This document shows, in pieces, positions 8,783 to 15,828 of a stretch of 64,000 nucleotides of DNA (position 1 is its first letter; each line of letters begins with the position of its first letter). The notes below the pieces were generated by a model that was not told the origin of the DNA, ran no database searches, and saw only the letters and a program-made list of their open reading frames with translations. The stretch spans positions 211,367 through 275,366 of IMG/VR virus record IMGVR_UViG_3300021959_006010. One strand, 5' to 3'. Made by a program: the position numbers and the translations under genes.

Positions 8783-9232
8783 ATGCAAACAATTAACTAC
8801 AGCACTACAGTAGCGGACTACTACGAGCACTTAACAAATGAGTGTGCGGATGAGACACGTTTTACTATGGATGAACAGTGCTTTGTGCTTGAGTTTTTAG
8901 CAGACACACTAAACGCACTTACACAGCTAAACAGTGAAACACTACGTGAGGAGGGCAACTTTGCACGTATGCAAGACTGTGCGGAAGTAGCGGACAACTA
9001 CGTAATGCTATTAAACAAGTGCAACAGTGAGTATGATGGCGAGGACTGCTATACGTTTACGCTAGAAGATGCGGGTGCTGCTATTTGCAGTTATGACACA
9101 GAGTACAGGGAGTGCATATGCGAGCAGTTTGAAGATGCGCTAAACGAGTACTTTGCACTTGTACAGCAAAACAAACTGCAAAAACTTGACATTGCAAACT
9201 GTTTAGCATGGCGTGTGTTTAACAGTTACTAG
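8783..9232 (+). CDS. early acidic hypothetical protein
   Basis: promoter 8716, GAGGGC 8774; no Pro. Confidence 0.8.
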   Translation: MQTINYSTTVADYYEHLTNECADETRFTMDEQCFVLEFLADTLNALTQLNSETLREEGNFARMQDCAEVADNYVMLLNKCNSEYDGEDCYTFTLEDAGAAICSYDTEYRECICEQFEDALNEYFALVQQNKLQKLDIANCLAWRVFNSY

Positions 9233-9306
9233 AAACAAAACACTTGACAAGTACTGTAGCACATGCTATAGTACTTGTACACATTAAATGCATTAGAGGG
9301 CAAACT

Positions 9307-9519
9307 ATGCAAGTACACATACTACAACTACAAGGCACTGGCGACGACGAGTACGCATGGGAAAACGCAAGCGTTTTTGCAAGCTGGGAAGAAGCACAGG
9401 AACGTGCTGCGCAAATGAGCAAAGAAGACATAGCGGAGTACGGCGAAGCGTTTTGGATAATGGGCGAGAACATGCGCATTGAAACGCACGACTTAGTAGA
9501 CAACAACTGGGGCTACTAA
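9307..9519 (+). CDS. early acidic hypothetical protein
   Basis: promoter 9244, GAGGGC 9296; start MQVH. Confidence 0.8.
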   Translation: MQVHILQLQGTGDDEYAWENASVFASWEEAQERAAQMSKEDIAEYGEAFWIMGENMRIETHDLVDNNWGY

Positions 9520-13186: not shown

Positions 13187-13263
13187 GGGCCTTTAGCTCA
13201 ATCGGTTAGAGCACCGGACTCATAATCCGTAGGTTGCGAGTTCGAGTCTCGCAGGGCCCACCA
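13187..13263 (+). tRNA. tRNA with CAT anticodon, probably tRNA-Ile2 (lysidine type)
   Basis: GGGCCT acceptor stem, CT-CAT-AA loop, TTCGAG T-loop, encoded CCA; body resembles bacterial Ile2 tRNAs more than Met. Confidence 0.85.
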
Positions 13264-13268
13264 AGTAA

Positions 13269-13345
13269 CTGCCCTTAGCTCAGCTGGATAGAGCAACAGC
13301 CTTCTAAGCTGTGGGTCGTAGGTTCGAATCCTACAGGGCAGGCCA
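13269..13345 (+). tRNA. tRNA-Arg(TCT)
   Basis: CTGCCCT/AGGGCAG acceptor, ACAGC-CTTCTAA-GCTGT anticodon arm, CCA. Confidence 0.95.
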
Positions 13346-13349
13346 ATTA

Positions 13350-13433
13350 GCCCGCGTGGTGGAATAGGTAGACACAAGGGACTTAAAATCCCTCGCTTAT
13401 GGCGTGCCAGTTCGAGTCTGGCCGCGGGCACCA
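13350..13433 (+). tRNA. tRNA-Leu(TAA)
   Basis: GCCCGCG/CGCGGGC acceptor, AGGGA-CTTAAAA-TCCCT, long variable arm, CCA. Confidence 0.95.
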
Positions 13434-13680: not shown

Positions 13681-14679
13681 ATGAATATCACTATCGTAGA
13701 AGGCACATATAAAATTCGAGGCAACGACACTTCAGTAGCAGGTCAAACGTTTCCTCTAGTAGAAGAGTTTAGAATGGGTAAGAATGGCGGGTACGTAACT
13801 GTTGATGGATCAGCAGTAGCAGGCTTCCCGGATCGTAATATCAAGATCAAGGTTGTAAGCGCCGACAGTTACGTACCCGCGGGGGAAGGCCCCGCTGATA
13901 GACAGCGCGAAGAAAGCGATGAAGAGATCATCGAACGAATTCGCACTCGCTTTGACATGCTAAAAGAAATGACCAAGGCTGTCAAGAAGCAAGATGTCAA
14001 AGCAATGATCGTAAGTGGCCCTCCAGGTGTTGGTAAGAGCCACGGCGTAGAAGAAGTACTTGATCGCTATAACACTATGCAGATGTTAGGCGGAGGCAAG
14101 CAGTTCGAAGTTATCAAAGGTGCTATGTCGCCCATTGGTTTGTACTGCAAGCTTTTCAAGATGGCAGACAAAGGTAAGGTTGTAGTGTTTGACGACTGTG
14201 ACTCGATCTTCCAGGACGAGCTAAGCCTTAACATCCTAAAGGCTGCTCTGGATTCAAAGAAAGATCGTTGGATCCACTGGAACACTGATTCGTTCAAGTT
14301 GCGCAACGAAGGTGTGCCAGACAAGTTCAAGTTCGAAGCAAGTGCGATCTTTATCACGAACCTAAAGTTTGACAAAGTCAAAGGTAAGATGCGTGAGCAC
14401 TTGGAAGCACTAGAGTCACGCTGTCACTACATGGACCTTACCATTGACACAGAACGAGACAAGATGCTCAGAATCAAGCAGGTCATTCGTGACGGTATGC
14501 TAGATAGCTATAAGCTGAGTGATGAGATCAAAGAAGAGATTGTAGACTTCTGCGATATTAATAAGAAGCGACTACGTGAATTGTCCCTAAGAACAGTTTT
14601 GAAAGTCGCCGATTTGGCACTTGCCTTTCCAGATCGTTGGGAAGCATTTGCCGAAAATACCGTGATGCGTCGAGCCTAG
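13681..14679 (+). CDS. P-loop (AAA+-like) ATPase
   Basis: Walker A GPPGVGKS, Walker B VVVFDDCD, sensor IFITN, Arg finger ALESR. Confidence 0.85.
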   Translation: MNITIVEGTYKIRGNDTSVAGQTFPLVEEFRMGKNGGYVTVDGSAVAGFPDRNIKIKVVSADSYVPAGEGPADRQREESDEEIIERIRTRFDMLKEMTKAVKKQDVKAMIVSGPPGVGKSHGVEEVLDRYNTMQMLGGGKQFEVIKGAMSPIGLYCKLFKMADKGKVVVFDDCDSIFQDELSLNILKAALDSKKDRWIHWNTDSFKLRNEGVPDKFKFEASAIFITNLKFDKVKGKMREHLEALESRCHYMDLTIDTERDKMLRIKQVIRDGMLDSYKLSDEIKEEIVDFCDINKKRLRELSLRTVLKVADLALAFPDRWEAFAENTVMRRA

Positions 14680-14697: not shown

Positions 14698-14846
14698 ACT
14701 GTGAGCGGGTCCGCCCTCAACTTGCTCACAGTACATTGTGGTTGGACCGCCCTCATCCAACTACAGTAGAGTAGACGAACGCCCTCACGCTCTACTCTAA
14801 TAGTGCCCTCGCAGTGTATGCCCTCACACTGCGGGGGCTTTTTTTT
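14698..14846 (+). ncRNA. four-hairpin RNA presenting GCCCUC loops; the last hairpin is also a terminator
   Basis: stems 14698-14732, 14737-14765, 14767-14799, 14805-14838; loops CCGCCCTCA, CCGCCCTCA, AACGCCCTCA, ATGCCCTC; G-U pairs on + strand; T8 tail. Confidence 0.8.
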
Positions 14847-14923
14847 GAAAAAAATGGTTGACAAGCTATAGGTTCGGTGTTATATTATTAGTATAAGTTG
14901 AAACACTGTAAGAGGGCAAACAG

Positions 14924-15118
14924 ATGATTAAGGTACACAACAGAGGTTACGGAACTGGCGAAGCACGTTACATTCCGTTGAGCGAAGTAAACATCCACAC
15001 ACAAAAGATCTGTGAGTTTACAGGCGCTCCGTACATTATCTTCGAGCACAAAGACTATCCGTTGGGTTCTTTGAGTGCTACATTTGATGGCACCTACTGG
15101 GACTGTGATTTAGACTAA
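14924..15118 (+). CDS. early hypothetical protein
   Basis: promoter 14858, GAGGGC 14912. Confidence 0.75.
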   Translation: MIKVHNRGYGTGEARYIPLSEVNIHTQKICEFTGAPYIIFEHKDYPLGSLSATFDGTYWDCDLD

Positions 15119-15129
15119 GGGAGAATACG

Positions 15130-15300
15130 ATGTACGAAGATGAGAACGAAGATTTGATCATTGCTGTACTGGAGCAGATCCGCGAGGATGTCAGCAACGG
15201 AGACCTCACAGCAATCGAACAGTTGATTGAAATGCAGGCACCTTACGCACTGCTGAACTTCCTACCTGAAGAGAAACAGAAACAATTTATGGAAGATTAG
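15130..15300 (+). CDS. early acidic hypothetical protein (56 aa, not in ORF track)
   Basis: AAGGGAGA RBS, MYEDENEDLIIAVLEQI... Confidence 0.7.
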   Translation: MYEDENEDLIIAVLEQIREDVSNGDLTAIEQLIEMQAPYALLNFLPEEKQKQFMED

Positions 15301-15444
15301 GAGACTATTTTCCGGATGCGTCCGTGTAGAGGACCCGGCCGGCTAAAAGCACCATTGTTAGTTTCAGTCAAGCTAGAGCGGCAACGTCAATAAGGCCGTG
15401 CGGTGCGATTGGAGATACTAGGGGCGTATTCGGAAAATAGTTTC
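15301..15444 (+). ncRNA. structured ncRNA of unknown class
   Basis: 23-bp closing stem 15301-15323/15422-15444 with four G-U pairs; internal hairpins, GCAA tetraloop, possible pseudoknot. Confidence 0.7.
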
Positions 15445-15519
15445 AAATTAGGGGTTGACAAATCCCACAGTAGATCATATACTGTATATAACAGTTAGGA
15501 AATAGCAAGAGGGCAAATC

Positions 15520-15828
15520 ATGCAATTCGTAATTACTACACAGTTCCTGGAAAACTACGGCGCACACTGCGAGGACGGTAAGTTCAAGTCCGGCAATGCA
15601 TATTGGAAGATGAAGGGAGGCACAGACTACTGTGTGTCAGGTCTTGATCGCATCCAAGATGCGGTTGCGTTCGTGGCAGCCAAGGAGATGCATAATAGCA
15701 TCGGCGCTAAGGAGTTTCCAGTAGAGTGGAAGACCTATGCAGAGTGGGAGCGTGATCTTCCGGAAGACGAGGACTACAGAGAGTTCTTGCTCGAGCAACT
15801 GAAACACGTAGACCCGAGGGAGGTGTAA
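15520..15828 (+). CDS. early hypothetical phage protein
   Basis: promoter 15455, GAGGGC 15509; TQ..ENYGAH...YWK.KGG motif. Confidence 0.8.
   Translation: MQFVITTQFLENYGAHCEDGKFKSGNAYWKMKGGTDYCVSGLDRIQDAVAFVAAKEMHNSIGAKEFPVEWKTYAEWERDLPEDEDYREFLLEQLKHVDPREV

What the first reader, a model, noticed from the sequence alone, without database searches (positions are those of the whole stretch)
15301..15444. Second structured ncRNA with a 23-bp wobble-containing closing stem and possible pseudoknot
Seen: the element fills the whole gap between a stop codon (15300) and the next promoter (15455). 15301-15323 pairs without interruption with 15422-15444, and all four non-Watson-Crick positions are G-U on the + strand. 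Interior: CGGCC(15336-40)/GGCCG(15394-98) crosses GCACC(15349-53)/GGUGC(15402-06) in pseudoknot order. There is also AUUG/CAAU, a UUAGUUU/AAGCUAG hairpin and a GCG-GCAA-CGU GNRA hairpin. Inference: a functional RNA possibly excised by RNase III (ribozyme-like, aptamer, 6S-like polymerase decoy, or anti-defence RNA). I cannot assign it to a known family.
Basis: partly seen in the sequence, partly recalled or inferred. Interest (0 to 1): 0.75.

Follow-up and report, generated by a model that had tools for sequence, protein, structure and literature searches.

The report
New phage small-RNA family, function unknown

Summary
The 23-bp closing stem (15301-23 / 15422-44, four G-U, + strand only) is real. 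It is the longest uninterrupted stem in the 275-kb phage record. The fold is far better than shuffles (z -4.7; minus strand -0.7).

Exact-word scans plus nhmmer found homologues in more than 180 viral and metagenome loci (69 distinct sequences, 139-226 nt). None were found in 185,579 prokaryote species genomes, in cultured phages or in Rfam. Similarity begins and ends exactly at the stem ends.

Covariation supports a three-way junction:
- P1, 21-25 bp.
- A short invariant "handle" arm, P2/P3.
- A long distal arm, P4-P6.

Of 46 pairs, 98.8% are canonical and 21 show compensatory changes.

Copies lie behind their own promoters, directly upstream of tRNAs (11 of 60 contexts), in front of small genes, or before the next promoter, as here. 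Metatranscriptome contigs carry the element.

Shorter and longer variants share P1 and the handle arm but have other distal arms.

Best reading (about 0.5): a stable small RNA cut or trimmed out of early transcripts at P1, acting in trans. Function is unproven.

The parts
14858..14886 (+). Sigma-70-type early promoter (TTGACA-17-TATATT) of the transcription unit whose last feature is the element
   Evidence: 11 of 12 consensus matches. No other promoter or terminator lies between it and the element.
14924..15300 (+). Two small ORFs (64 aa, 14924-15118; 56 aa, 15130-15300) co-transcribed upstream. The TAG stop at 15298-15300 abuts the element.
   Evidence: No Pfam family.
15301..15323 (+). P1, 5' strand of the 23-bp closing helix. 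The outer half is AU-rich and carries the family-invariant A4-C5-U6.
   Evidence: Covariation at 13 of 22 pairs, 99.3% paired.
15324..15352 (+). 'Handle' arm: P2 15324-27/15349-52, internal loop AGA (15328-30) / AAAA (15345-48), P3 15331-32/15343-44, and a variable apical hairpin. G29 A30 G31, U44 and A47 are invariant.
   Evidence: The same arm is present in all size variants.
15353..15357 (+). Junction J2/4. In relatives this is the insertion point of an extra hairpin of about 10, 50 or 80-90 nt.
   Evidence: Alignment A2; sequences.
15358..15421 (+). Distal arm: P4a 15358-62/15417-21, bulge GAU 15414-16, P4b 15363-69/15407-13, P5 15373-74/15402-03, P6 15378-81/15396-99.
   Evidence: RNAalifold. 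Pair counts. Formed in 58-64 of 69 single-sequence MFEs.
15382..15395 (+). Apical loop CAACGUCAAUAAGG, near-invariant in the main type. It was partly used as a search seed, so its invariance is inflated.
   Evidence: Seeds.
15422..15444 (+). P1, 3' strand. In relatives that precede an ORF, this strand carries the Shine-Dalgarno sequence AAGGAG.
15445..15483 (+). Next early promoter cassette (AAATTAGGGG + TTGACA-17-TATACT) for the 102-aa gene at 15520-15828. It is not part of the element. The same cassette occurs in relatives that lack the element.

Best explanation
The element is one copy of a previously uncurated family, and wider superfamily, of phage-encoded structured small RNAs.

In this phage it is transcribed from the early promoter at 14858 as the tail of a two-ORF transcript. 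It folds on its own into a three-way junction closed by a 23-bp helix.

Proposed mechanism:
- The closing helix marks the RNA off from the surrounding transcript. It lets the RNA be cut or trimmed out by host RNase III within P1 and/or by exonucleases stopping at P1. Where a tRNA follows, as in relatives, RNase P would make the 3' end.
- The GC-rich inner half of P1 then remains as a protective closing stem.
- The released stable RNA acts in trans. It would use the invariant handle arm (P2/P3) and the conserved distal loop, most likely by binding a protein or RNA of host or phage.

Shown: the family, the fold, its strand, its modular placement and its presence in RNA libraries.
Inferred: excision, stability, trans action and the partner.
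For: Fold and strand:
-.
- G-U pairs number 241, against a handful of A-C, in P1.

Gene-like behaviour:
- Similarity stops exactly at the P1 ends, in unrelated flanks.
- There is one copy per genome.

RNA-only transcription units:
- L183: promoter, element, tRNA-Trp, next promoter.
- L079: promoter, element, tRNA-Pro.
- L081: promoter, element, a second variant, tRNA-Pro.
- A tRNA starts within 15 nt downstream in 11 of 60 distinct contexts, and never directly upstream.

P1 properties:
- Length held at 21-25 bp in 63 of 68 members.
- Outer 11 bp 28% GC, inner 57%.

RNA libraries:
- Metatranscriptome runs hold 33-50% of the element's words but only 4-6% of those of the 1-kb surroundings.
- Their contigs carry the element at word depths 636 and 303.

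Modular build: the same P1 and handle arm carry different distal arms.
Against: - No read-end data show a discrete transcript. The metatranscriptome contigs run through the element into its flanks. Their depth is a contig mean, and DNA carry-over cannot be excluded.
- In the window itself no tRNA or own promoter adjoins the element.
- No partner protein was found. Neighbourhoods hold only small unknown ORFs.
- No RNase III gene is in the record, which is 77% complete.
- In ORF-adjacent copies the Shine-Dalgarno sequence sits inside P1 (13 of 17), which also fits a purely cis role.
Confidence: 0.5

Rival explanations
1. It is a purely cis-acting intercistronic module. The self-contained fold acts as an RNase III processing and stability signal, like the T7 R-sites. 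It would protect the 3' end of the upstream message. Where an ORF follows, it would hide the Shine-Dalgarno sequence in P1 until cleavage or an upstream terminating ribosome opens the outer half of the helix. No trans function.
For: - It is always packed tightly between cistrons, with stops 0-5 nt before P1 and starts 2-15 nt after it.
- An SD-like sequence sits in the P1 3' strand in 13 of 17 ORF-adjacent copies, against 19 of 42 others.
- L346/L347 keep only a 9-bp outer-P1 hairpin with the SD, between the same genes.
- P1 is about two helical turns long.
- In the window it sits at the 3' end of a unit that has no terminator.
Against: - A processing site does not need an invariant three-way junction, a conserved 14-nt loop and exchangeable arms.
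- Units made only of the element plus tRNAs have no message to regulate.
- Close syntenic relatives do without it.
Confidence: 0.25
2. It is a riboswitch-like or protein-responsive leader that controls the downstream gene, as proposed for the orphan manA and wcaG motifs of marine T4-like phages.
For: - The fold is complex and conserved.
- It often lies in 5' UTRs: the MRTVHYVG gene follows in 15 of 60 contexts, with the SD in P1.
- It sits next to a manA-like RNA in L170.
Against: - Downstream partners are unrelated: tRNAs, a promoter (as in the window), and varied ORFs.
- A 21-25-bp P1 is far too stable to be switched by a ligand.
- No terminator or alternative-pairing platform is conserved.
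- The MRTVHYVG gene has the main element upstream in only 13 of 51 contexts and is absent from this genome.
Confidence: 0.07
3. It is a small non-autonomous mobile DNA element (MITE/REP-like), and its terminal inverted repeats are what looks like P1.
For: - The boundaries are sharp and its location varies among related phages.
- Copies about 92% identical lie in unrelated flanks.
- Different variants occur in tandem.
- ATTAG lies on both sides in the window.
Against: - There is a single copy per genome.
- P1 mismatches are almost all G-T on one strand, which is an RNA signature: 241 G-U against 2-4 A-C.
- Compensatory changes keep pairing rather than a shared end sequence.
- The 3' ATTAG belongs to the promoter cassette, which is present in relatives without the element, and L092 has no such repeat.
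- In every context that can be oriented by a tRNA, promoter or SD-ATG, it is co-oriented.
Confidence: 0.05
4. It is a self-cleaving ribozyme that processes polycistronic or tRNA-containing transcripts.
For: - Conserved junction nucleotides.
- Phage location next to tRNAs, where hammerhead, twister and HDV-like ribozymes are often found (established knowledge).
Against: - No match to any ribozyme family in Rfam, even at E<=10.
- No pseudoknot is supported.
- The long, perfectly paired P1 is atypical.
Confidence: 0.05
5. It is a divergent member of a known closing-stem RNA class: retron msr-msd, Y RNA/YrlA or 6S RNA.
For: The closing stem is formed by the two ends, with a short arm and a long hairpin. 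This loosely resembles the retron layout a1/a2 + msr + msd, or the Y RNA layout of stem + module.
Against: - No RT gene and no TROVE/Rsr gene are in the record, nor among the neighbours.
- There is no T-arm-like module.
- There is no 6S central bubble.
- Rfam gives no matches.
Confidence: 0.03

Closest known systems
T4 RNAC and RNAD (species 1 and 2 stable RNAs of the T4 tRNA cluster)
   Same: They are phage-encoded stable RNAs of about 120-140 nt, transcribed with tRNAs, and their function is still unknown (PMC3014915, PMC9697503). Members of this family also sit in promoter-RNA-tRNA units.
   Different: There is no sequence or fold similarity. RNAC has a tRNA-like T arm and no long closing helix. 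The T4 RNAs lie downstream of a tRNA, while this family lies upstream. The window copy is not next to a tRNA.
manA and wcaG orphan RNA motifs (Rfam RF01745, RF01761)
   Same: They are complex structured RNAs known almost only from marine metagenomes and T4-like phages, with diverse downstream genes and unknown function (PMC2864571). A manA-like RNA lies directly between one family member and a tRNA in L170.
   Different: The sequence and architecture differ. The element itself gives no manA match. manA has no 21-25-bp closing helix.
RNase III processing signals of T7 early mRNA and of rRNA precursors
   Same: About two turns of dsRNA lie between cistrons of a polycistronic early transcript. 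The rRNA stems likewise enclose a functional RNA between paired flanks (established knowledge).
   Different: T7 sites are simple hairpins of about 60 nt with an internal loop. Here the helix encloses a conserved three-way-junction RNA. Cleavage is untested.
Y RNA / YrlA
   Same: The ends pair into a long stem, and there is a constant part plus a variable module. They are found in some large myoviruses that have many tRNAs (established knowledge).
   Different: There is no Rsr gene, no tRNA-like domain and no Rfam YrlA match.
Bulk candidate structured RNAs of IMG/VR (Fremin et al. 2023, PMC10690425)
   Same: The data source and the kind of object are the same, so the family may be among their 10,006 unnamed candidates.
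   Different: This could not be checked because no supplementary files are held. No description of this RNA was found.

Membership tests
Any Rfam 15 family | Covariance-model match at the gathering score or a meaningful E-value | tested here: not met
   No match to the element in the window, even at E<=10, nor in 11 family loci searched at E<=1 or E<=0.1, nor in L170 re-searched at E<=10.
6S RNA | Rod of about 180 nt with a large central bubble that mimics an open promoter | tested here: not met
   The consensus is a three-way junction with two arms and no central bubble.
Y RNA / YrlA | Rsr(Ro)-binding stem plus a tRNA-like domain, with an rsr gene in the genome | tested here: not met
   No TROVE domain in the record; no T-arm; no Rfam match.
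Retron msr-msd | Adjacent reverse transcriptase gene | tested here: not met
   No RVT_1 in the 275-kb record. Neighbours in 68 loci are small unknown ORFs.
Retron msr-msd | a1/a2 closing repeat enclosing short msr hairpin(s) and a long msd hairpin, with an invariant branching G after a1 | tested here: inconclusive
   The layout is loosely similar. G24 is G in 64 of 69 sequences, so it is not invariant.
MITE / REP-type DNA repeat | Many copies per genome, in both orientations | tested here: not met
   One copy in the record. It is co-oriented with adjacent tRNAs, promoters and SD-ATG wherever these allow orientation.
MITE / REP-type DNA repeat | Terminal inverted repeats with strand-symmetric mismatches, and target-site duplication | tested here: not met
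   241 G-U pairs against 2-4 A-C. The flanking ATTAG belongs to the promoter cassette.
RNase III processing signal | About 20 bp or more of regular dsRNA within a polycistronic transcript | tested here: met
   23 bp here; 21-25 bp in 63 of 68 members; intercistronic position.
RNase III processing signal | Staggered cleavage by RNase III in vitro or in vivo | not testable with these tools
   Only contigs of RNA runs could be laid, so there are no read ends.
Riboswitch / cis-regulatory leader | Consistently upstream of functionally related genes, with a switchable expression platform | tested here: not met
   Downstream features are tRNAs (11), the MRTVHYVG gene (15), promoters (5) and others (29) out of 60. 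P1 is too long to switch.
T4 RNAC/RNAD-type stable RNA | Homology to rnaC or rnaD | tested here: not met
   The folds differ, and rnaC carries a T arm. No BLAST match was found in cultured phages, which include T4.
manA RNA (RF01745) | Match to the manA model | tested here: not met
   In L170 the manA-like match is the neighbouring RNA (9163-9341), not the element (9012-9155).

The most novel reading that the evidence does not exclude
The family is a modular phage RNA system. A constant 'handle' (the 21-25-bp P1 plus the GAGGG/CCURAA arm) would recruit one common host or phage protein. Exchangeable distal arms would give specificity. That would be a new class of early-expressed phage ribonucleoprotein or decoy RNA. 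It might, for example, act against host RNA- or tRNA-targeting defences, and it would be traded horizontally among marine jumbo and T4-like phages together with their tRNA islands.
Probability: 0.15. Interest if true: 0.85.

Novelty: new member of a known kind. Interest (0 to 1): 0.6.

Why it matters
Phage non-coding RNAs other than tRNAs are few and mostly unexplained. T4 RNAC/RNAD and the manA and wcaG motifs have stayed orphans for decades.

Here is a well-defined family:
- It has a covariation-backed fold.
- It has more than 180 environmental copies.
- There is evidence of RNA-level presence.
- It has a modular build: a constant closing helix and handle arm, with variable distal arms.
- It lives in the same 'RNA islands' as phage tRNAs, tmRNA and manA-like RNAs.

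It gives a concrete object to add to Rfam and to test for processing, protein partners and a role in early infection. It would be one more handle on why large marine phages carry RNA islands at all.

Tried and rejected
- BLAST of the element and its surroundings against cultured phages, near and distant modes: nothing.
- Looking for the element next to homologues of the flanking genes. 47 loci carry the downstream gene, 4 carry the AAA-ATPase gene and 1 carries the 56-aa gene. The element is absent from all of them.
- Whole-record searches of the five largest relatives: absent.
- Supplement look-up in Fremin et al.: no files are held.
- Partner search: RT, TROVE and RNase III are absent from the record. 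Neighbourhood clustering gave only small unknown ORFs. The frequent neighbour gene MRTVHYVG has no Pfam family, no atlas lead and only one weak cultured-phage match, and it is absent from this genome.
- A crude test of the coding strand of the flanks was too noisy to use.
- A motif scan for further handle arms in the record itself was unspecific.
- The target-site-duplication idea (ATTAG) is rejected: it is part of the promoter cassette.
- The idea that the handle mimics a Shine-Dalgarno sequence was dropped, because position 32 covaries (GAGAG/ACUU variants).
- The apical loop is complementary to a gamma-proteobacterial 16S segment only by recollection. This was not tested and is not used.

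Full report
**Observation**

The sequence is as described. 15301-15323 pairs base for base with 15422-15444. There are 19 Watson-Crick pairs and four G-U pairs, and every G-U is readable only on the + strand.

As RNA, the + strand folds to -56.7 kcal/mol (z -4.67; none of 200 dinucleotide shuffles is as good). The reverse complement folds to -33.9 (z -0.72). A scan of the whole 275,366-bp record for uninterrupted stems found nothing longer; the next best have 20 bp.

The element exactly fills the space between the TAG stop of a 56-aa ORF (15298-15300) and the next promoter cassette (AAATTAGGGG, -35 at 15455).

**Setting**

The window is the last 64 kb of an IMG/VR record of a large uncultured myovirus. 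CheckV puts it at 77% complete. It encodes tail sheath proteins and replicative helicases.

The stretch from about 10 to 19 kb of the window is an early-type region. About 15 near-consensus sigma-70 promoters, all on the + strand, drive small ORFs. The local order is:
- promoter
- three tRNAs (13187-13433)
- promoter
- AAA-ATPase ORF
- hairpin cluster with terminator (14805-14838)
- promoter at 14858
- two ORFs
- the element
- promoter at 15455
- 102-aa gene

No terminator follows the element.

**Relatives**

Neighbour-gene searches brought 52 related loci. None of them holds the element. The five largest related records lack it altogether.

Exact-word scans with three conserved stretches of the element then found it elsewhere. 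An nhmmer profile confirmed 62 IMG/VR loci with 39 distinct sequences of 139-226 nt.

The same pattern found nothing in one genome each of 185,579 bacterial and archaeal species. In all, 182 loci hold a copy, and 69 distinct full-length sequences including the window's were aligned.

Similarity starts and stops exactly at the ends of P1, while the flanks are unrelated. The carrier contigs belong to the same broad phage lineage as the window. They share genes at 55-80% amino-acid identity. But in them the element sits beside genes whose homologues lie at 160-195 kb and 261 kb of this record, not at 226.7 kb. It is therefore an accessory, relocating module, with one copy per genome.

**Structure**

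RNAalifold on 39 sequences returns the same fold as the single-sequence MFE of the window copy. In element numbering:
- P1: 1-23/122-144.
- P2: 24-27/49-52.
- Internal loop: AGA / RAAA.
- P3: 31-32/43-44, with a variable tip.
- A junction where relatives insert an extra hairpin of about 10, 50 or 80-90 nt.
- A long arm:
  - P4a: 58-62/117-121.
  - Bulge: GAU.
  - P4b: 63-69/107-113.
  - P5: 73-74/102-103.
  - P6: 78-81/96-99.
  - A 14-nt loop, CAACGUCAAUAAGG.

On 69 sequences the 46 pairs are canonical in 98.8% of cells, and 21 pairs show changes on both sides. Sliding the 3' partners by 1-3 columns gives 40-49% paired and 4-11 such pairs. Column shuffles never exceed 92.3% and 16. The 24 interior pairs taken alone still beat every shuffle: 98.3% and 8, against 97.1% and 6.

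Single-sequence MFEs reproduce P1, P4a, P4b and P6 completely in 58-64 of 69 members. P1 holds 241 G-U pairs against a handful of A-C, which fixes the strand and argues for RNA.

- 36-40/94-98 is paired in 60% of cells.
- The crossing 49-53/102-106 is paired in 51%.
- In both, one side is invariant while the other drifts.
- His two small hairpins are compatible with the sequences but fail at the informative variants. C59 is compensated by G120, not by position 75. C74 pairs with G102 and breaks A60-U74.
- P6 and the GCAA hairpin cannot be told apart by covariation.

Caveat: the homologues were fished with seeds lying in 35-53, 77-101 and 110-124. Invariance there is inflated. The covariation in P1, P2, P4b (5' side) and P5 is independent of the seeds.

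**Contexts across the family**

Among 60 distinct flank contexts with enough downstream sequence:
- A tRNA starts within 15 nt after the element in 11: Pro x6, Asn x3, Thr, Trp.
- A conserved 68-aa gene (MRTVHYVG...) follows in 15.
- Another small gene (MTWTVTTQF...) follows in 2.
- A promoter follows in 5, as in the window (also L092, L165).
- A promoter lies within 80 nt upstream in 6.
- No copy lies directly downstream of a tRNA.

Some units hold nothing but RNA genes:
- L183: promoter 56-84, element 111-249, tRNA-Trp 253-326, next promoter 341.
- L079: promoter, element, tRNA-Pro four bases later.
- L081: promoter, element, a second 111-nt variant, tRNA-Pro.

In L170 the element is followed by a manA-like RNA (RF01745, 50.5 bits, just under the gathering score of 55.2) and then tRNA-Asn.

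Where an ORF follows within 15 nt, the 3' strand of P1 usually carries the Shine-Dalgarno sequence AAGGAG, paired to CUCUUU. This holds in 13 of 17 such copies, against 19 of 42 others.

L346/L347 have the same flanking genes as L073 but keep only a 9-bp hairpin made of the outer P1 with the SD. This is most simply a remnant.

P1 is 21-25 bp in 63 of 68 distinct members. Its outer 11 bp average 28% GC and its inner 11 bp 57%.

**RNA evidence**

Metatranscriptome runs from river, estuary and sea hold 33-50% of the element's sampled 31-mers. They hold only 4-6% of those of the surrounding 1 kb.

Laid on the window, their contigs match 15294/15302-15441 and differ beyond it. Two river runs hold a contig reading promoter, 555 nt, element, promoter. 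It has 7-12 differences over 209 nt and word depths of 636 and 303.

This shows presence in RNA libraries and a second phage with the same element-promoter junction. It does not show a discrete transcript. Contigs have no ends of molecules, depth is a contig mean, and DNA carry-over is possible.

**Superfamily**

Other RNAs share P1 (with the invariant ACU...AGU) and the P2/P3 'handle' arm (GAGGG-loop-CCURAA) but carry different distal parts:
- L168/L178: 165-174 nt.
- The second elements of L081 (111 nt) and L171 (92 nt).
- L360.
- A 96-98-nt 'mini' type.

The mini type dominated an unbiased scan seeded only in the handle, accounting for 14 of 16 loci. It is again followed by tRNAs or SD-ATG. 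The constant part is therefore the closing helix plus the handle arm, and the distal arm is exchangeable.

**What it is not**

- No Rfam 15 family matches, even at E<=10.
- It lacks the 6S central bubble.
- It lacks the Y-RNA tRNA-like domain, and the record has no TROVE/Rsr gene.
- There is no reverse transcriptase for a retron.
- It does not behave as a MITE: single copy, strand-biased wobble pairs, no target-site duplication. The 3' ATTAG belongs to the promoter cassette found in relatives without the element.
- T4 rnaC and rnaD fold differently; rnaC has a T arm.
- A riboswitch reading fails on the unrelated downstream features and on a P1 that is too long to switch.

**Mechanism**

Best supported (about 0.5): a stable small-RNA gene module. 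It is transcribed as part of early units. The self-contained fold is delimited by P1.

Processing would be by RNase III within the two-turn helix and/or by exonuclease trimming to it, and by RNase P where a tRNA follows. After a mid-P1 cut, the AU-rich outer half would fall apart. This would free the SD of a following ORF where there is one. The GC-rich inner half would stay as the closing stem. The RNA then acts in trans through the handle arm and distal loop.

- Shown: the family, the fold, the strand, the modular placement, the RNA-only units and the presence in RNA libraries.
- Inferred: cleavage, stability, trans action and the partner.

The main rival (about 0.25) is a purely cis-acting intercistronic processing, stability and translational-coupling module. 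The remaining rivals are minor: a riboswitch-like leader, mobile DNA, a ribozyme, or a retron-, Y- or 6S-like RNA.

**Novelty and weight**

No description of this RNA was found. The closest in kind are the orphan phage RNAs:
- T4 RNAC and RNAD, whose roles are unknown (PMC3014915, PMC9697503).
- The manA and wcaG motifs of marine T4-like phages (PMC2864571).

It may be one of the 10,006 unnamed candidates of Fremin et al. (PMC10690425), which could not be checked.

I rate it a new member of a known kind. It is a solid, well-populated new RNA family with an unusual modular build, but its function is unknown.

Noticed in passing
window 14700-14846 (+): A series of four hairpins, the last being the terminator at 14805-14838, carry GCCCTC five times. 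This is the exact complement of GAGGGC, the ribosome-binding motif in front of about 21 early genes between 8.5 and 19.2 kb. There are 28 matches against 9.6 expected. The same hairpin series occurs in L004 and L007. There is a weak NsiR1 match at 26.5 bits, below the gathering score of 39.
   Followed up: partly
window 13787-13804 / 13863-13880: An 18-bp perfect inverted repeat with a 58-nt spacer lies inside the AAA-ATPase ORF (13681-14679).
   Followed up: no
G000:C1:190771-191164 (outside the window); also L139 6549-6943 and L146 6787-7181: ARAGORN calls a permuted tmRNA gene in this phage record and in two carrier contigs. The record also has 10 tRNA genes in two clusters.
   Followed up: no
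L170 9163-9341: A manA-like RNA (RF01745, 50.5 bits, just under the gathering score of 55.2) sits between a family member and tRNA-Asn. In these phages, manA-type RNAs may be stable RNAs of tRNA islands rather than mRNA leaders.
   Followed up: partly
L108, L139, L354, L359, L360 (directly upstream of the elements); L166, L170, L179: Two further conserved blocks precede the elements. One is a hairpin, GGGGAGRGG..CUGCAGAAAG..CCYCUCCCACG. The other is CAGCCGGGGCGGGGGGCGUG..UAUCACCU. They are probably more unnamed RNAs of the same islands.
   Followed up: no
L354 1070-1188 and relatives (L355, L358, L370, L371): A 119-nt RNA is bounded by a similar AU-rich closing stem (ACUUCUUAAUACUG/CAGUAUUAAGAAGU) but has an unrelated interior. 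It lies upstream of the MRTVHYVG gene or of tRNA-Trp.
   Followed up: no
L346/L347 (about 40 nt upstream of the MRTVHYVG start): These loci have the same flanking genes as L073, but only a 9-bp hairpin made of the outer P1, with the Shine-Dalgarno sequence in its 3' strand. It is either a remnant or an empty form of the element site.
   Followed up: partly
window 15445-15519 and the other early promoters (e.g. 15995, 16999, 17802); L002, L004, L007, L008: The early promoters come as a long, nearly identical cassette: AAATTAGGGGTTGACA ... TATACTGTATATAACAGTTAGG ... AGAGGGCAAA-ATG. The cassette is repeated in front of many small genes and shared with related phages. It is reminiscent of the mobile promoter-stem-loop cassettes of T4-type phages.
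   Followed up: no
window 15520-15828: The 102-aa downstream protein is widespread: 47 viral loci at 54-85% identity. Its N-terminus (MQFVITTQF) resembles that of the 66-aa MTWTVTTQF protein that follows the element in other phages.
   Followed up: no
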